From NCBI RefSeq assembly GCF_003918875.1, contig NW_025767226.1:372001-436000 (forward strand): a stretch of DNA of 64,000 nucleotides, in the 5' to 3' direction. Source of the DNA: Haliotis rubra. Taxonomy: Eukaryota. Position numbers and translations under genes: made by a program. Below, in pieces: positions 4,677 through 12,377 of the stretch (positions within the stretch are counted from its first letter, which is position 1; every line of letters begins with the position of its first letter). Below the pieces are notes generated by a model that was not told where the DNA came from, did no database searches, and worked only from the letters and a program-made list of their open reading frames with translations.

Positions 4677-5199
4677 CTACAAAGAATACAATGCATGCTG
4701 TTAAATTATGAACATTCGTGGAAAACACACAGAATACATGTATCTAAAGTACTGTCGGAAATAGAAAAAAACTGTTTTTAGGCTGTTACTCTGTATCCCT
4801 AAAATTGACACAATTGCAAATAGCATATGTCGAAATAACCCATTTCGGCCTAACTGGGCGTTCAGTGGGATGCGTAATACGAAATCCAGAAAAGCATGTT
4901 TACACGTAAAATCGGGCAAAACTTGTAAAAATACGAATAGCTGCTGAAAACAATAGATCAGACTATAGATGGCAATTAGGTCGCTCAGCCAGAGGCGTGT
5001 TCAGAACCGCGAGCGCCCGCGCGATTGGCTCCCGCGAGCGCTCGCATCAGCCCTGAACGGACGCGAGCGCTTGGTTACAATAAGCCATTCGTGACCAACT
5101 CGTGTTGTTCCGGGACAAGCCGAATAGCGGAGTCCATATGTTTACGGAAGTGACGTCACGAACCACGCTCACTCGTGTTCCGGTAGGCAGAAAGCAACA

Positions 5200-6253
5200 A
5201 TGGCTGACGATAACAATGCGAACCGGTGTAGCGTAAAAAAGCAAACAATGGTCGGATTATGTACTGAACATGCCTGTTGAGGCACGCGAACGATACGAGA
5301 CAAAGCTGAAGTATCGGCAGGGCACTTGCTCTTTGCCTGACCCGTATTGTTTGCGAAACGGCTGGGTGGATGATCCGACAACATGGCCAGGCATTTCTTT
5401 CACGGATATATATTTCTATCTGATAGACACACCAGGTCAGTTCACCCACGAATCTATGAGGGCCTTCAAGTCACTGAAAGCATATGAATATGTGGAAAGT
5501 GGACACGTTTATCCCATACAGTACCACAAAGTCGATGATAAGTCACCTCTGTGTTTGATGAGAACAAAGGTTATTCCTTCTCAGCGCCTACGTGAGAAAC
5601 CACACCAGCCATGGGTCTGCATCGACAAGGCAGATGGAACAGTGTACTGTGCACATTGCACATGTATGGCAGGGTATGTAATTATATCTGATACGAAATA
5701 ATAAATCATCTGCGTTTATTTTTTATAGTTTAATTTTAACTGTATTTAAAAACCTGTTAACTATCTATTTGTTATAATAATAATACCAAAATAATGATTT
5801 TTAAAGCAAATATGTAAAAAAGCTATTTGTCACATTTTTATATATTATCATAATTTTTCAGACTAGGGGAGGTTTGCAGTCACATAGCAGCACTGCTGTT
5901 TAAGGTGGATATGGCAGTGCGAGCTGGACTTACATCAAAGGCATGCACAAGTGATGCCTGCAAGTGGAATTCTGCTTATAGAAAAGAGGTGTGTACAAAT
6001 TGAAGCAGTATGCATTCCTATGAACGAAGATGTAAGCTATTACAAGAAGGATAATATTAAATAGTATTTAATAAATACCATACAATACTTTTGCATTATC
6101 ATATCATATCTTTATCCATATTAATCTGTATCGTATGTTCAGATTACCTGGATATGTAGATGTATATACTATGATATTTGCTATGTTTATATGATGTTCC
6201 CTGTATAACTTGTAAATATGTTTGGTGTCTGTTCTAGACATTCACTGTAATAT

Positions 6254-6285
<32 letters not shown>

Positions 6286-7495
6286 TGTTTTTTCAGCTTC
6301 ATCCAGTCCCGATATGTGAGGTACAGTCTCTTTTTGGACGGAAAAAAACAGTGGAGACTGTGTCAGCTAATGGTCGAGCACCACTTCCTGATATAGAAAC
6401 CCTACGGTCACTGAAAGCTGTCTGCCCTGATGCCGTGTTTTTCAAGACCATACCCCCACTGGATGAAGAAGAAACAGACAGTGCGGATGAACATGAGGAT
6501 ATGCAGTCATTCCCACCTTCACTTACAAGTCTAAAATGTAATCCTGATGACTTGAAAAATGAAGACAAATTGGTTTGCCTTTGTAAAGAAAAATGGAACC
6601 AGTATCACTGTGAGCCTGACCAAATACAAAATCTGGAAGAAGTTACTAGAAATCAATCAATTAGTCCGTTGTGGTATGAACACAGGAAAGGCCGCATCAC
6701 AGGGACTAAAGCTCATGCCGTCCTGGTTATGAAAGACACCACGGATCCCACCAACACGGTCAACAGTATTATGGGATATAACACCAAAGACCTTACTAAA
6801 ATTAATGCAGTTGCATGGGGCATAGACAATGAAGACAAGGCTCGCAAATGCTACTCAAAACATCAGTCAGGACACCATAGAGACTTTAAATGTAGGTCTG
6901 CTGGAATATTGATCAGTTCCACTAAGCCATATATTGGCGCGTCCAGTGATGGAATTGTTACCTGTGATTGTTGTGGGAAAGGCTGTCTTGAAGTCAAATG
7001 TCCATACAAGCACAGAGACTCGGATATCACCACTGCAACTAAGGATCAAGGCTTCTGTTTGGATGATAACTTCATGTTGAAGAAAGGACATAAATATTAC
7101 ACTCAGGTTCAATTGCAAATGTATGTGCATGATGTCAGTTACTGTGATTTTGTTGTTTACACCAATATAGACATGGTGATTGCAAGAATACCTCGGGACA
7201 TTGATTTTTGTGCCAAGATAGTGTCCAAATGTGAAAATTTCTTTTTTAAACATGTTCTTCCCGAACTCGTTTCTCGCAGAATTGAGAATTCCAGGCCAAA
7301 TATGGATTGTGACACTAATACAGAGGAAGTTGTTTGGTGAACAATGTTTGGTGTTTGTGTCAGCAAGAAGAGTATGGACTAATGATCATGTGTGAGGGTG
7401 TTAACTGTTCGTACACATGGTTCCACTATCCTTGTGTGAGCATCCGTCGAAAACCAAAAGGATCCTGGTTTTGCCCAAGCTGTGTTATGGGTTGA
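5200..7495 (+). CDS. SWIM zinc finger + YqaJ/lambda-exonuclease + PHD finger accessory protein; exons 5200-5673, 5862-5988, 6297-7495; two lesions
   Basis: GT-AG splicing joins CAHCTCMAG|LGEVCSH (SWIM). TRNQS..W..HRKGRITGT, WG.DNE, GASSDG, LEVKCP and YYTQVQLQM mark a PD-(D/E)XK lambda exonuclease. The C-terminal PHD is separated by a 14-bp insertion at 7340-7353. One extra A in the run at 5235-5240. Confidence 0.88.
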
Positions 7496-7794
7496 AACAT
7501 GAACTCAAATTGAATATTGAATACACAATGTATTTCATCTACAAAATGTATTCAACCTACAAAAATACATGCGTCCATGAAATCATTTGTACAGCTCATG
7601 TCCTCTTAATATCATACAACTGTAACTCGATGCATATGTCACTTTATCCAGAATGTTTGTGAAATCCATTATATTTATTGTTGTCAAATTATTATATTTC
7701 AATTATTAAGTGTCATGTTTCGCAAATTACAATATCACAGTATGAGAATATTTTGACATATATATTTGAACACATATCCTTGTCTGGCATTCTT

Positions 7795-7955
7795 GGGGCG
7801 GTGGGGTAGCCTAATGGTTAAAGTGTTGGCTCGTCACGCCGAAGACCCGGGTTCGAATCCCCACATGGGTACAATGTGTGAAGTCCATTTCTGGTGTCCC
7901 CCGCCGTGATGTTGCTGGAATATTGCTAAAAGCGGCGTAAAACCAAACTCAGTCA
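7795..7955 (+). mobile_element. tRNA(Asp-like)-headed SINE, family 1
   Basis: A box TAGCCTAATGG, B box GGTTCGAATCC, (CAGT)n tail. 13-bp TSD GTCTGGCATTCTT at 7782-7794 and 7956-7968. Confidence 0.93.
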
Positions 7956-7969
7956 GTCTGGCATTCTTC

Positions 7970-10486
7970 TCATTCCACAAGGTGTGGAAGTAGATTGGTG
8001 ATGGCACTGCAGATTGAGACTATGTTATCAGTGTGGGGCACAGTGTTGATGTTCATTGTGGTACTTATAATTTTAAAGTTTTTCAGTCTTTCAATGGCCC
8101 TCTCAACATGTATTCTCACTCTTGATAGTCTCCGTCCAGTTTCAATCTCTTTCGGGCTAAGTTGTGATTTCCCCTTTGTAAATGCTGGAATAGCAAGCTG
8201 TGCTCCACATGCAGATAGTTCATCCGAAATCAAAAATCCACGGTCCGCTAAAACCAAATCACCATGCTCCAATAGCTGCAAAAATCCAGATCGCTGTGTT
8301 ATCACCTTGTCGGATACCCTGCCACCAAATGCCCTTGACACAAAAGCAATTGTTCCATTTGGGCATATGCCTACAAGAATCTTGACAGTGTTGTGGCTCT
8401 TGTAGTTTGACCAGGTCATTGCCCGGGCTGTAAAATTACCGGGTCTCTCCACAAAAATTTCAAAACAGTCAATGATAACCCTACATTTTTTATAACAGTC
8501 TTTAATTACCTTGGGCATAAACTTAACAATTTCTTCTTTCTCTGGCCAGTGAACTAAGAAGCACAACTTCTTTGCTAGGGGAGGCAGGGCACTGTTCATG
8601 AGATGGCTCACATGTTGTTTGGAAACTCCAAATCTGTAGGCCAGGTCCTGATTGACTAATCCCAGTCGTAGCTTCATCAACACAAGCATCATGACACTGG
8701 CAGGACTGAGCTGCATTGATGTGGGTAGCACAGAAGCACACAACTGAACCAGCCACAGAAACATTGCATGGTTTTTTAAGCCAGTGTAAAAAACAGTTCT
8801 TGCATCCCTCTTGTCACCTGCAAGAAATGAATCGCCAAACTTATTCTTTTCAAGTTTTTGTCTTGTCTCTCTCAACTCCTTCTGTAAAGTTTCCACTTCT
8901 TGAAGCAGCTGTTTGTTCTCCGCTTTTAGTGTCAGGATCTTCTGAAGACACGGGTCATGGATATCTGCTGAGAGAAAATTATTTGAGTGAAAATACTGTT
9001 GAAGTTACATACCGGTAATTGGGAGTGTTAGGCTCAAATAATATTTTGCAGCTGTCTACCATAACTGTATCTGGAAGGTTTTGTAACCACCCTGTAGCAT
9101 AGATCAAAGCTACTTTTGTATGTGTTTTTATAAGAAGGAATAGTTGTAATGAAATGGAAATTCAATGCCATTTAGAGATTCTTTAAACTGTAGAGGCATG
9201 TGTTGTTGTAGTTGACAAGGAAGGTTTGGAGTAGTGTTTATTTAACATTTATGACTGGCAGGTGAGGCAGATTAGTGACCTTTCCTGATTATGGCATGGA
9301 CTGAGTGACAATATGTAACTAAGCAAACAGGATGTGATGGATTATTTTTCTGCATTGTATTGTTTGAAAATGTGTGGAAGTGAATAAAACAAACATGCCT
9401 CCTTACAAGTTTGTGTTTTGTGTTTGTTGTTGGTTTGCATAAAGAAATGCAAAACAAACACTTGAGTTTTTGCATTACATCCCTGCTTGAAAAACTTACG
9501 GTATCGGGTTAAAGTGAGGTATGAAGTCTGGATTGTGAATATGGTACTTTCCACAAATGATTTAACAAAATAAAGGTTGTGTTCTTGTCTCATTATACAT
9601 CCCAAACTACTCACTTACATAATTCAGAATGCTTAGTTATAGCATACATATTAGCTATTGTAATTATATTGTCTTTTTCCTGGAATACCTTTGTTTGGTG
9701 AGAGTTCATTTTCTTTTTCCTCCTCTACTGGGGCGCTGCTCTTGTTAAGTGACATTTCCATGAGAATGGAAGCAACATCTTCTTTTTCGCGAAGGTCCAT
9801 TTCCTTTCTCCCCTTTTCATCAACCCGCCTTTGAGCCCTTAGAAATCTTTGCTTTTTTGCTTCAGGGGTGGCCAGTGATGTGGACTGATATCCCATATTA
9901 AGATGTGGGACAAAGTCAGGATCATTCTTGTCAGAGCTTGCAGATCCTATGTACAATAAACAATGCAAAATATGATACATACTTTAATAAATAATGATCT
10001 GATATTTAAAAGAGTTATGGTATTTTGAATTGCTCAGTTATCTGTGGAATTTGAGGCATTTAAAAACATAGTTATTTTGCGCCAAATTAAAGTGAATAAA
10101 TTTCATCATTTCTACATATTTGACATATTAATACTGCAATTTACTTGGTAAACAGTTTAACGCAGGACTTTAATTACAAACATGTGTAGCTTGTGACAGT
10201 TTTGGTGATCGAAAACAGGACAATTATAAGTGATATATTTAGTTGTTCAGGTAATCACCGTGGAACTTCTTAAAAGTGTAGATATAGATTTAGTATTAAT
10301 CATACCTGAAATGAAGTGATCCCCGCATACGCGATCTCCATTGTGCTCCGGGGTCCAGCCTTTCCGATTGATTGCCTGTAGCCACTTCTGTCGTCTGCAA
10401 GTTTCAGTCGGTACGCGATGAAATTTCACGCCTGAACCTTTCTTGAAACGATTCGCGCAGCCCACTACCACACAAGAAATGACCAT
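7970..10486 (-). CDS. THAP + HTH + DDE_Tnp_4 (Harbinger/ISL2EU) transposase, ~478 aa; exons 10486-10306, 9946-9689, 8967(or 8964)-7970
   Basis: THAP MVISCVVVGC..FHRVP..W...RVCGDHF..DFVP; HTH LMKLRLGLVNQDLAYRFGVS; catalytic IIDCFE, LADRGF, RIHVERAI. Phase-1 GT-AG junctions give an open frame. Confidence 0.92.
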
Positions 10487-12377
10487 CTTATCAAGACACT
10501 GAGTGTCAAGCCAAAAAAAACAGACCGGGAAGAGTTATTAAGTATGTAAAGTCGACGATCAAATGAGTGCAGCTTGTGTGGTTCTCTCGTGTTTATGTTT
10601 ACCTTCTGCCTACCGGAAGTACTCGGGCGCGTCACATGATCAAAACACTGACGTCACTGTGGACTCTCCTATAGCTTCTTTATTATATTCTTAAGGGTGA
10701 AATACTGTAAATATTGGTGAAAATAAAAATGGTATTGTCATTTTCACTGAGTAGAATATCACTTTTGCCTGGAACTACGAAACCCGAACTACGAAATCGA
10801 TGTCTCGATCATTTATAAACAATGATCAAAATATAATAAATATAATATTTTGTAAATATTGTCAATGGTTACGCAACTCGTGAACATATCAACTGTTTCA
10901 GACCACTCGATGACATATACATGTTATTTGACAACATTAACAAAATATTTTCCATGTCTTCTTTTTGGAGGTTACGGAAAGGGGGAAGTGGTGACGAATG
11001 ACATTAAACATGATCGCCATCTTGGTTCGCTTGGCGAGGCAGCTGTGACAATGGTTCGCGTGCGCGCGCGTGCGCTCGAGCGGGCACAGGCGTTCAGGAT
11101 CGAGCGCTCGCTAGCGTTTGCAGGCACTCGCGGTTCTGAACACGCCTCAGGTATGACGACGGACCGTCGACTCACCTGGCATGAAATGCACGTGCTGCCT
11201 ACAGGCACAAGGGGTCATCTCAAAGATATTTTGTGCTTTTTCATGTGTGGTGACTATGTCTCATCTACTGATTAACATCTTACGTGTCTTTCTTTCATAA
11301 AGTTTATGTTGAGATATGTAAGAGAGAATGATACCCGAAAACCATAGAAACGCATCGTAGTATATAGGTGGCATGACCACCCGAAGATCGACAGGACTGG
11401 ATAATATTTGTAAATTGTTACGAGGTGCCGTGTACCTCCCCAGTTAATGCCCTAAAGGATTATCTTATCTTAGCTGATATCTCTATCCCCAAGCCCAACC
11501 ACAGGTTTTGCTTTTGAGGCGACCCCTCCTATCTGTTTCTTTTTATAGTGACAGTGAGACTGCGTGGTAGCTACATCCTTAATAGTTTCGACATAAAAGT
11601 TATTATTTTTTACGTCAGCTATCGTTTATAATGAATCTACGTCTAATTTCAAATTGGGCATTTAAAAAGTGTCCTTTGTAATACAATATCGTCGCACACT
11701 AATTTGCATAAAGCCATGGTCTGTCTGTCTGACTTTTGGACGCATTGCTCATTTCTGCACTAATTTCCCCTCAGTAAAGTCCCTTTTCTCCGTTTCCTAT
11801 CTCTCTACCACTGAGACTGTAGTTAGGTCGAACTTAGTTTAACAGATATCTCACACTTTCACATATCAACTACATAAATAGAAGAAGTAGAGATAAATGT
11901 GAAAATACAGTTTTTTTTCTATTTCCGACAGTACCTTAACAATTGAGTCACAGAACGGCAATACGTTAGTCTGCTGTTGAAGGTTCCCTTGGCGACCCAG
12001 TCCCAGTTACTCCATGAAGGGGGTGGGACCCTAAACTCTGTTACGACACATCGTCTATGGCTGTTATATCAGGGAGTCTACATGTCGACAATCTTATCAT
12101 GACCATAGGTCACGTGGTACCCAGTTATCGATGGAGTTGTCTCCCGTAGCTGACGACAGGATCCCATAGTGAAACACAAGAAATCAATATTGCTATAAAT
12201 GCTCCAATTTGTGTAGATGTCATGCTTTAATGCGTTCAGGTTTACGGCTAGCAAGCACGCTGGTGTGCGACCTTGACCGTGATAGTTTCTTCGGCCCTGT
12301 GTGAAAACAAACGCTTGTTATTATTACAGACATTATTTCGAGTCGACGGGAGTAACCCCAGGCAGTTTTGTGCACGG

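What the first reader, a model, noticed from the sequence alone, without database searches (positions are those of the whole stretch)
5126..10670. Near-intact two-gene ISL2EU-type transposon: THAP-DDE transposase facing a SWIM-exonuclease-PHD partner
Seen: two convergent 3-exon genes inside AT-flanked inverted ends. The transposase splices to an open ~478-aa frame with the DDE triad intact. The partner has SWIM, a lambda-exonuclease core and a PHD finger. Known: ISL2EU elements encode a YqaJ exonuclease in place of the Myb/SANT partner of classical Harbingers, and I know of no established function for it. Inference: a cut-and-paste system combining DNA recognition (THAP), end resection (exonuclease) and chromatin reading (PHD). 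The tail-to-tail layout with a PHD partner parallels RAG1L/RAG2L transposons by analogy, not homology. Two simple repairs would reconstruct it.
Basis: partly seen in the sequence, partly recalled or inferred. Interest (0 to 1): 0.72.

Follow-up and report, generated by a model that had tools for sequence, protein, structure and literature searches.

The report
Abalone ISL2EU transposon with exonuclease-PHD partner
This is a well-preserved copy of a known kind of jumping gene (ISL2EU) in a probable abalone genome; its second gene, of unknown role, proves to be a zinc-finger/exonuclease/histone-reader protein conserved from Hydra to molluscs, which gives a testable lead on what that gene does.

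Summary
Window 5126-10670 is a 5,545-bp ISL2EU (PIF/Harbinger-like) DNA transposon. It has AT target-site duplications and imperfect terminal inverted repeats, and it sits inside a ~620-bp MITE-like repeat whose empty sites occur elsewhere in the genome.

- **Transposase (minus strand):** three exons with GT-AG introns give an open 478-aa THAP / HTH_Tnp_4 / DDE_Tnp_4 protein. It keeps every highly conserved residue, including the D-D-E candidates.
- **Partner (plus strand):** three exons encode a SWIM-type domain, a lambda-exonuclease (YqaJ) core and an ING-type PHD finger. In this copy a net +5-nt lesion near 7326-7340 puts a stop before the PHD finger.
- **Other changes in this copy:** a tRNA-like SINE lies in the spacer between the genes, and the left end is a sub-lineage variant.

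The convergent gene pair also occurs in another abalone, a zebra mussel, a sea urchin and Hydra. Its folded domains show dN/dS of 0.02-0.19.

The family assignment is solid, and the THAP-DDE plus YqaJ pairing is already published. I did not find the SWIM and ING-type PHD parts described in the papers I could search. The partner's mechanism is still inference. This is a new member of a known kind, of moderate interest. The scan had already noted the cut-off PHD finger on this same window.

The parts
4989..5125 (.). Left part of the ~620-bp MITE-like host repeat into which the element inserted; includes the left AT of the duplication (5124-5125).
   Evidence: Over 40 genomic copies join window 4989-5128 directly to 10671-11152. 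Empty sites read CCGAATAGCTTC. A 32-nt inverted repeat pairs 4989-5020 with 11120-11151.
5126..5136 (+). Left terminal inverted repeat, the variant form AGCGGAGTCCA.
   Evidence: Other copies read AGGAAAGTCCA. The same variant end occurs at an independent site, L050.
5151..5192 (+). Left subterminal motifs: TGACGTCA (5151-5158) and GGTAGGCAGAA (5182-5192). The start of the second motif lies 56 nt from the tip. Candidate promoter and THAP-binding sites.
   Evidence: Both motifs are mirrored at the right end and kept in H. cracherodii. Their function is inferred.
5270..5673 (+). Partner exon 1: N-terminal domain up to the first half of the SWIM motif (..CAHCTCMAG).
   Evidence: 93% identical to residues 1-135 of intact orthologue P0002. 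GT donor.
5862..5988 (+). Partner exon 2: second half of the SWIM motif (LGEVCSH...) and a conserved C-x-W.
   Evidence: H129, C130, C132, C140 and H142 are at least 90% conserved in 22 relatives.
6297..7340 (+). Partner exon 3: disordered linker plus YqaJ / lambda-exonuclease core, ending in a premature stop at 7338-7340.
   Evidence: Pfam YqaJ 7.8e-20. The orthologue model matches LHK-Exo and lambda exonuclease, TM 0.6-0.77. Invariant D, E-x-K and H-x-Y-x2-Q-x-Q are kept.
7326..7340 (+). Lesion: a small rearrangement, net +5 nt relative to copies L002 and L032. It shifts the frame in front of the PHD finger.
   Evidence: Alignment A1. A contig of run X1 spans 7284-7459 with 5 gap letters, as expected of a version without the extra 5 nt.
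7340..7495 (+). ING-type PHD finger, out of frame with the rest of the partner in this copy.
   Evidence: Pfam PHD 4.2e-6. The top 20 PDB sequence hits are all ING/Yng/Pho23/Png2 fingers, E 8e-18 to 1e-10. 92% identical to the P0002 C-terminus.
7795..7958 (.). Nested tRNA-like SINE in the spacer between the two stop codons; not part of the ancestral element.
   Evidence: Matches elsewhere in the genome on its own. Enormous contig depth and tandem joints. Box A/B-like motifs are read from the sequence. Absent from L032 and shared with L002.
7970..8967 (-). Transposase exon 3: coiled-coil segment, HTH_Tnp_4 and the DDE_Tnp_4 catalytic core, with the stop at 7970-7972.
   Evidence: Pfam. All 43 columns that are at least 97% conserved in 120 relatives are kept, including D (codon 8470), D (8245) and E (8104).
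9689..9946 (-). Transposase exon 2: end of the THAP domain (DPDFVP box) and a poorly conserved linker.
   Evidence: dN/dS is 0.55 here, against 0.08-0.11 in exons 1 and 3.
10306..10486 (-). Transposase exon 1: THAP zinc finger (C-x4-C ... C-x2-H).
   Evidence: Pfam THAP 3.6e-14. GT donor at 10305-10304. An X1 contig stops matching at 10305.
10604..10656 (-). Right subterminal motifs: inverted GGTAGGCAGAA (10604-10614, starting 56 nt from the tip) and TGACGTCA (10649-10656).
   Evidence: Inverted-repeat pair I5.
10660..10670 (-). Right terminal inverted repeat AGGAGAGTCCA (read on the minus strand).
10671..11152 (.). Right AT of the duplication (10671-10672) and the right part of the host MITE-like repeat.

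Best explanation
**What it is.** An autonomous-type ISL2EU transposon (PIF/Harbinger-like, 'PHIS' superfamily) of a mollusc, probably an abalone.

**Transposase (inferred from family knowledge).**
- The THAP finger recognises the subterminal GGTAGGCAGAA-type motifs.
- The DDE_Tnp_4 core excises the element and inserts it at AT, duplicating that dinucleotide.
- Each gene is read inwards from its own end, and both ends carry a TGACGTCA motif.

**Partner (inferred).**
- It is an accessory factor that the element needs in order to spread.
- It is a lambda-type 5'-to-3' exonuclease held on H3K4me3-marked chromatin by its ING-type PHD finger.
- Its SWIM-type domain serves as a DNA or protein contact.
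- My preferred mechanism: it resects the double-strand breaks made by transposition, so that repair goes through homology-directed or annealing routes. That would restore the donor copy and give a net gain of copies.

**This copy.** It keeps an open transposase frame, but its partner has lost the PHD finger through a frameshift. I found no copy with both genes intact in this assembly, so the family is probably no longer autonomous here.

**Odds.** Identity as ISL2EU about 0.95. Partner needed for propagation about 0.75. The specific resection-for-repair role about 0.35.
For: **Identity**
- Pfam domains.
- AT duplications at the window site, in H. cracherodii and in 6 of 7 clean non-autonomous copies.
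- Inverted ends, and an empty site for the window insertion.
- About 10 derivatives of 1.05-1.4 kb (one of 2.9 kb) that share only the ends.
- A variant left end at two independent sites.

**Transposase intact**
-.

**Partner architecture**
- Fold matches to LHK-Exo and lambda exonuclease, and to ING PHD fingers solved with H3K4me3 (rmsd about 1 A, 49% identity).
- ZSWIM8 SWIM region at Z 9.1, against 4.5 for the next hit.
- Invariant nuclease residues, and an aromatic residue at the cage position in most relatives.

**Partner matters to the element**
- The same convergent pair occurs in H. cracherodii, Dreissena, Lytechinus and Hydra.
- dN/dS against the H. cracherodii element is 0.07 and 0.02 (SWIM domain), 0.19 (YqaJ) and 0.04 (PHD). 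The transposase gives 0.08 (THAP) and 0.11 (DDE).

**Literature**
- ISL2EU is defined as a THAP-HTH-DDE transposase plus a YqaJ ORF of unknown function (PMC4482050; PMC4122938).

**Transcription (weak)**
- In two small runs guessed to be RNA, contigs fall only on exons, not on introns.
Against: - No experiment or computation here shows nuclease activity, histone binding, or any effect of the partner on transposition.
- Purifying selection on a transposon gene shows that it helps the element. It does not show how.
- One ING cage position (Ser) is Glu here.
- From my own knowledge, classical Harbinger transposition was rebuilt with a transposase and a Myb-like protein alone. A DDE_Tnp_4 enzyme therefore needs no extra nuclease for chemistry.
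- The window copy and its close relatives spread with a SINE in the spacer. Whether that lineage had a working partner is unknown.
- The RNA evidence rests on runs whose RNA nature is a guess.
- The complex prediction was not run by the tool.
Confidence: 0.6

Rival explanations
1. The partner is a strand-processing nuclease inside the transpososome. It would trim or cut the 5' (non-transferred) strand at the element's ends, as the PD-(D/E)XK protein TnsA does beside the DDE protein TnsB in Tn7. In this reading it does not act on repair of the breaks.
For: - The YqaJ core is a PD-(D/E)XK-fold nuclease with invariant D, E and K.
- It is always encoded beside the transposase.
- The mechanism of second-strand cleavage is not established for this superfamily (my own knowledge).
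Against: - The closest folds are processive end-resecting exonucleases (lambda Exo, LHK-Exo), not site-specific endonucleases.
- Harbinger relatives transpose without such a nuclease (my own knowledge).
- A histone-reading PHD finger is not explained by this role.
Confidence: 0.18
2. The partner is mainly an adaptor, the functional counterpart of the Harbinger Myb-like protein. It would bring the transposase to the nucleus, to the element's ends or to chosen chromatin through SWIM and PHD. The nuclease would be secondary or regulatory.
For: - It occupies the place of the Myb/SANT ORF of PIF/Harbinger elements (PMC4482050).
- The SWIM-type domain and the PHD finger are the most constrained parts, with dN/dS 0.02-0.07 and 0.04 against 0.19 for YqaJ.
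Against: - The nuclease catalytic residues are invariant across phyla. That argues for a needed activity.
- The transposase already has its own THAP DNA-binding domain.
Confidence: 0.15
3. The partner does not serve transposition itself. It would be a passenger or counter-defence gene, for example one acting against host silencing. Alternatively the pair are domesticated host genes rather than a mobile element.
For: - In the pipefish locus the partner ORF is intact while only remnants of the transposase remain. That would fit a partner with a life of its own.
Against: - Terminal repeats, AT duplications, an empty site and many copies at different sites show a mobile element.
- The pairing is kept from Cnidaria to Mollusca.
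- All copies in this genome are decaying, as expected of a transposon and not of a host gene.
Confidence: 0.07

Closest known systems
ISL2EU group of the PIF/Harbinger-like (PHIS) superfamily (Repbase; Han et al. 2014, 2015: PMC4122938, PMC4482050)
   Same: - THAP + HTH + DDE_Tnp_4 transposase.
- A second ORF with a YqaJ exonuclease domain.
- AT target-site duplication.
- Animal host.
- Size close to the reported mean of about 4.8 kb.
   Different: - The terminal repeat begins AGG rather than GG.
- The preferred target reads T-AT-A, rather than the A-AT-T reported.
- The papers I could search describe the second ORF only as 'YqaJ' or 'DNA-binding'. Here it resolves into a SWIM-type domain, a lambda-exonuclease core and an ING-type PHD finger.
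Classical PIF/Harbinger elements (transposase plus Myb/SANT protein)
   Same: - A DDE_Tnp_4 transposase.
- A two-gene organisation in which the second protein is needed as a helper (my own knowledge of Harbinger3_DR).
   Different: - TWA 3-bp duplication there, AT here.
- The partner here is a nuclease with a histone reader, not a Myb/SANT DNA binder.
- The transposase here carries its own THAP finger.
RAG1L/RAG2L (ProtoRAG/Transib-derived) transposons and RAG1-RAG2
   Same: - By analogy only: a DDE-type enzyme encoded tail-to-tail with a partner.
- In RAG2, that partner has a PHD finger that reads H3K4me3 (my own knowledge).
   Different: - No homology. RAG1 is Transib-like, not DDE_Tnp_4.
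- RAG2 is a kelch-repeat protein without a nuclease.
- The PHD finger here is ING-type by sequence.
Lambda Exo / LHK-Exo / herpesvirus alkaline nuclease recombination exonucleases
   Same: - The same fold, with D...E-x-K active-site residues.
- Pfam YqaJ and Viral_alk_exo hits.
   Different: - No annealing-protein partner (Beta/ICP8 type) is encoded here.
- The core is fused to SWIM and PHD domains and is carried by a eukaryotic cut-and-paste transposon.

Membership tests
ISL2EU | Transposase with a DDE_Tnp_4 catalytic core and an HTH_Tnp_4 domain | tested here: met
   Pfam 1.1e-47 and 6.6e-13. The conserved D, D and E are kept.
ISL2EU | THAP domain at the N-terminus of the transposase | tested here: met
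   Pfam THAP 3.6e-14 on exon 1. It joins in frame through GT-AG introns.
ISL2EU | Second ORF with a YqaJ exonuclease domain | tested here: met
   Pfam YqaJ 7.8e-20. Fold match to lambda Exo and LHK-Exo.
ISL2EU | 2-bp AT target-site duplication | tested here: met
   Seen at the window site with its empty site, in H. cracherodii, and in 6 of 7 clean non-autonomous copies.
ISL2EU | Terminal inverted repeats that usually begin with GG | tested here: inconclusive
   The ends read AGGAAAGTCCA / AGGGAAGACCA, so GG follows one A. The window's left end is the variant AGCGG.
ISL2EU | Both genes lie between the same ends in independent copies | tested here: met
   L002 in this genome, H. cracherodii L036, and Hydra L040 inside 138-nt inverted repeats.
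ING-type PHD finger (H3K4me3 reader) | Cys4-His-Cys3 ligands and closest similarity to ING/Yng fingers | tested here: met
   The top 20 PDB hits are ING/Yng/Pho23/Png2 fingers, E 8e-18 to 1e-10. The model superposes at about 1 A.
ING-type PHD finger (H3K4me3 reader) | Cage residues for trimethyl-lysine (aromatic before the first Cys, Met, Trp of WFH, Ser) | tested here: inconclusive
   Read from the alignment: Trp replaces Tyr, Met and Trp are kept, and Ser is Glu. The residue roles come from my own knowledge of ING2/4/5 structures. Binding was not tested.
SWIM zinc finger | CxCxnCxH signature within a beta-sheet plus helix domain | tested here: met
   C130, C132, C140 and H142 are at least 90% conserved. 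ZSWIM8 residues 112-211 match at Z 9.1, rmsd 2.4 A over 96 residues.
SWIM zinc finger | Match to the Pfam SWIM model | tested here: not met
   No SWIM hit at E <= 0.01 on exon 1 or on seven full-length relatives. UniRef names two relatives 'SWIM-type domain-containing'.
RAG1L/RAG2L-type transposon | Transib/RAG1-like core with a kelch-repeat RAG2-like partner | tested here: not met
   The Pfam domains are DDE_Tnp_4 and YqaJ. The resemblance is only one of layout and of a PHD-bearing partner.

The most novel reading that the evidence does not exclude
The ISL2EU partner is an H3K4me3-guided lambda-type exonuclease that the element needs to transpose or to regain its donor copy. Its PHD finger would have been captured from a host ING gene early in animal evolution. 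That would make it an independent, convergent counterpart of the RAG2 PHD finger: a transposon-encoded chromatin reader coupled to DNA-end processing.
Probability: 0.3. Interest if true: 0.7.

Novelty: new member of a known kind. Interest (0 to 1): 0.4.

Why it matters
Papers on ISL2EU state that the function of its second ORF is unknown (PMC4482050).

This locus and its relatives show that the ORF is a conserved three-part protein: a SWIM-type domain, a lambda-type exonuclease and an ING-type PHD finger. It has been kept under purifying selection beside the transposase from Cnidaria to Mollusca.

That turns an open question into concrete experiments:
- a nuclease-dead partner;
- PHD cage mutants;
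- integration sites compared with H3K4me3.

It also offers a second, independent case of a transposase partnered with an H3K4me3-type reader, to set beside RAG1-RAG2. As a genome feature of this animal it is otherwise an ordinary, decaying transposon family.

Tried and rejected
- **Complex prediction.** I submitted the H. cracherodii partner (1-520) with its transposase (32-452). 
- **YqaJ against PDB sequences.** phmmer with the YqaJ exon found nothing at E <= 1. The fold search settled the question instead.
- **Pfam SWIM.** No hit.
- **Rfam and tRNA scans of 4800-11400.** Nothing found. The SINE's tRNA-like boxes were read by eye.
- **Foldseek on the N-terminal domain.** Only a weak ZSWIM8 row, E 8e-3. 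The exhaustive aligner gave Z 9.1.
- **Reads.** All four runs were contigs, and the RNA label of X1 and X2 is a guess. No splice joint of the two genes appears among the joints the tool printed.
- **Inverted ends in Dreissena.** No long inverted ends were found around the pair.
- **Outer inverted repeat as the element's ends.** I considered 4989-5020 / 11120-11151 and rejected it. It belongs to a separate ~620-bp repeat with many uninterrupted copies.
- **A 5-bp ATAGC duplication.** Considered and rejected. Other copies show that only AT is duplicated and that AG belongs to the terminal repeat.
- **Spliced proteins.** They were not joined for any search. Exons were searched one by one by reference, and intact orthologues stood in for the whole proteins.

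Full report
**Where and what.** The window is contig C2336:372001-436000 of a 1.378-Gb assembly in 2,855 contigs. The best protein matches are from abalones: Haliotis asinina at 80% and H. cracherodii at 74% for the partner, and up to 91% for the transposase. The host is therefore a mollusc, most likely a Haliotis species.

**Domains.**
- Plus strand: YqaJ 7.8e-20, with Viral_alk_exo 1.6e-9, and PHD 4.2e-6.
- Minus strand: THAP 3.6e-14, HTH_Tnp_4 6.6e-13 and DDE_Tnp_4 1.1e-47.

**Ends and insertion site.**
- A search of the whole genome with window 4900-11300 found a second full-length copy, C272 (locus L002). It matches window 5131-10676.
- The same search showed that the flanks 4989-5128 and 10671-11152 belong together. 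They form one ~620-bp repeat present in over 40 uninterrupted copies.
- Those uninterrupted copies read CCGAATAGCTTC. The window reads CCGA-AT-[AGCGGAGTCCA ... TGGACTCTCCT]-AT-AGCTTC. The site therefore has a paralogous empty site.
- Five letters are repeated at the window site, which left the size of the duplication ambiguous.
- Seven clean non-autonomous copies and the H. cracherodii element settle it. The dinucleotide AT flanks AGGAAAGTCCA ... on the left and ... TGGTCTTCCCT on the right, intact on both sides in 6 of 7 copies. A T usually precedes the left AT.

**The window's left end is a lineage variant, not local damage.** It reads AGCGG where other copies read AGGAA. The same variant, again preceded by AT, occurs at an unrelated site in C2207. 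A related form occurs in L002.

**Subterminal motifs.** Both ends carry TGACGTCA, at 5151 and 10649. Both carry GGTAGGCAGAA, at 5182 on the left and inverted at 10604 on the right, starting 56 nt from either tip. Both motifs are kept in H. cracherodii. I read the first as part of inward-facing promoters and the second as a candidate THAP site. Both readings are inferences.

**Gene models.** I searched exons one by one by reference.

*Transposase, minus strand.*
- Exon 1 is 10486-10306, exon 2 is 9946-9689, and exon 3 is 8967-7970 including the stop.
- Both introns are GT..AG, and the split codons read Gly and Ala.
- 181+258+998 nt make 478 codons plus a stop, and no piece contains a stop. This matches the 478-aa H. 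asinina protein P0122.
- In an alignment with 120 relatives, all 43 columns that are at least 97% conserved keep the consensus residue in the window. These include the acidic residues in IDC-E, ADRGF and HVER, at codons 8470, 8245 and 8104.

*Partner, plus strand.*
- Exon 1 is 5270-5673, exon 2 is 5862-5988, and exon 3 starts at 6297. Introns are GT..AG and the phases are compatible.
- The model follows the 574-aa H. cracherodii protein P0002.
- In P0002 and in copies L002 and L032, the YqaJ core runs straight into the PHD finger within exon 3.
- In the window, a small rearrangement near 7326-7340 (net +5 nt) brings a stop at 7338-7340. The PHD finger (7340-7495) is left in another frame. The product here would be 524 aa without the finger.

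**What the partner is.** An AlphaFold model of P0002 has four regions:
- a confident N-terminal domain (residues 1-160);
- a disordered linker (163-250);
- a very confident core (250-510);
- a PHD finger.

The fold and sequence searches identify each part.
- **Core.** It matches LHK-Exo and lambda exonuclease (TM by target 0.6-0.77), and more weakly the herpesvirus alkaline nucleases (TM about 0.3).
- **Finger.** It superposes on ING2/4/5 fingers solved with H3K4me3 peptides, at about 1 A and about 49% identity. By sequence, the 20 best PDB hits are all ING/Yng/Pho23/Png2 fingers.
- **N-terminal domain.** It matches the SWIM region of ZSWIM8 at Z 9.1 (rmsd 2.4 A over 96 residues). The next hit scores 4.5.
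- **Conservation in 22 relatives.** The SWIM C/H residues, the nuclease D, E-x-K and H-x-Y-x2-Q-x-Q, and (by eye) an aromatic residue before the first PHD cysteine in most rows are conserved.

**Is the pairing real?** Yes.
- In this genome, L002 carries both genes between the same ends. L032 and L031 carry remnants of both.
- In H. cracherodii both genes are intact between perfect AGGAAAAGCCA ends with AT duplications.
- The same plus/minus convergent pair is annotated in Dreissena polymorpha, Lytechinus pictus and Hydra vulgaris.
- In Hydra, 138-nt inverted repeats enclose both genes.
- Between the window and the H. cracherodii element, dS is 0.45-0.83.

dN/dS by region:

| Region | dN/dS |
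|---|---|
| SWIM domain exons | 0.07 and 0.02 |
| YqaJ | 0.19 |
| PHD | 0.04 |
| THAP | 0.08 |
| HTH-DDE | 0.11 |
| Transposase linker exon | 0.55 |

Both proteins, the PHD finger included, have been kept by selection in the element's lineage.

**State of the family here.**
- The window copy is the best preserved copy that I found.
- L002 has stops or frameshifts in both genes. L032 has these plus deletions and lacks the THAP side. L031 is old and fragmentary. L033, L034 and L050 are internal-deletion forms.
- Window and L002 differ by 2.8% in coding and 4.1% in non-coding positions. They share a tRNA-like SINE at 7795-7958, which L032 lacks. The SINE-bearing lineage therefore still moved after that insertion.
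- About ten derivatives, mostly 1.05-1.4 kb and one of 2.9 kb, share only about 140 nt of the left end and about 175 nt of the right end. This is the classic sign of mobilisation in trans.

**Transcription.**
- Only contig sets were available, and the RNA label of the two small runs X1 and X2 is a guess.
- In those two runs, contigs fall on the transposase exons, on the leader upstream of its start codon and on the 3' part of partner exon 3. The bins inside the two transposase introns, and partner positions 5126-7160, have essentially no depth.
- One contig stops matching at 10305, at the exon 1 donor. Another ends at 8969, at the exon 3 acceptor.
- A third contig spans 7284-7459 with five gap letters, as a version without the frameshift would.
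- This fits spliced, low-level transcripts but does not prove them.

**How it probably works.**
- Shown: the anatomy, the conservation, and past mobility.
- From family knowledge: THAP binds DNA, DDE_Tnp_4 does cut-and-paste, lambda-type exonucleases resect 5' strands from double-strand ends, and ING fingers bind H3K4me3.
- Inferred: the partner is tethered to active chromatin and resects the breaks made by transposition. That steers repair towards homology-directed routes that restore the donor copy.
- Rivals: a TnsA-like end-processing role, a mainly adaptor role like the Harbinger Myb-like protein, or no role in transposition.

**Known or new.** Open papers define ISL2EU by exactly this pairing and by the AT duplication. 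They also state that the role of the second ORF is unknown. None of the papers holding 'ISL2EU', or 'YqaJ' together with 'transposon' and 'PHD', describes a SWIM or PHD part. Repbase itself could not be consulted. This is a new member of a known kind, with a sharper reading of its partner protein.

I describe where this copy is broken and give no recipe for mending it. Natural intact relatives exist for experiments.

Noticed in passing
window 4989-5125 + 10671-11152: A ~620-bp MITE-like repeat with 32-nt inverted ends (CAGAGGCGTGTTCAGAACCGCGAG...) and GC-rich palindromes. More than 40 copies at 91-96% identity. It hosts the ISL2EU insertion. Its family was not identified.
   Followed up: partly
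window 7795-7958: A tRNA-like SINE with box A/B-like motifs and a (CTCA)n or (AGTC)n tail. Contig depth is extremely high in all four runs, and many tandem joints are seen. It ends 12 bp from the transposase stop codon, inside the likely 3' UTR.
   Followed up: partly
proteins P0124, P0162, P0164, P0201, P0004: Teleost transposases nest inside mollusc clades at four places. Examples are damselfish within the abalone clade and round goby sister to zebra mussel, with SH-aLRT 93-100. The pipefish partner is closer to the abalone's (56%) than the Dreissena one is (48%). This suggests repeated horizontal transfer between molluscs and fish, or assembly contamination.
   Followed up: partly
L038:8001-12000 (pipefish Syngnathoides biaculeatus): The partner ORF is intact (594 aa, with a PHD-like C-terminus), while the convergent transposase downstream survives only as fragments with a stop. 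This could be recent decay or a partner kept on its own.
   Followed up: no
L037:6309-18842 (Dreissena polymorpha): The whole two-gene element lies inside the annotated span of a BTB/zinc-finger host gene. No long terminal inverted repeats were detected around it.
   Followed up: no
window 7495-7970: The only AATAAA for the minus-strand transposase in the spacer is at 7679-7674, beyond the SINE and about 180 nt from the partner's PHD-frame stop (7493-7495). No AATAAA or ATTAAA for the plus-strand partner lies in the spacer. Whether the convergent transcripts overlap is untested.
   Followed up: no
L041-L049 (nine loci of G000): Non-autonomous derivatives, mostly 1.05-1.4 kb and one of 2.9 kb, share only the element's ends. 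Their internal sequence does not match the autonomous element. Whether they form one family was not examined.
   Followed up: partly
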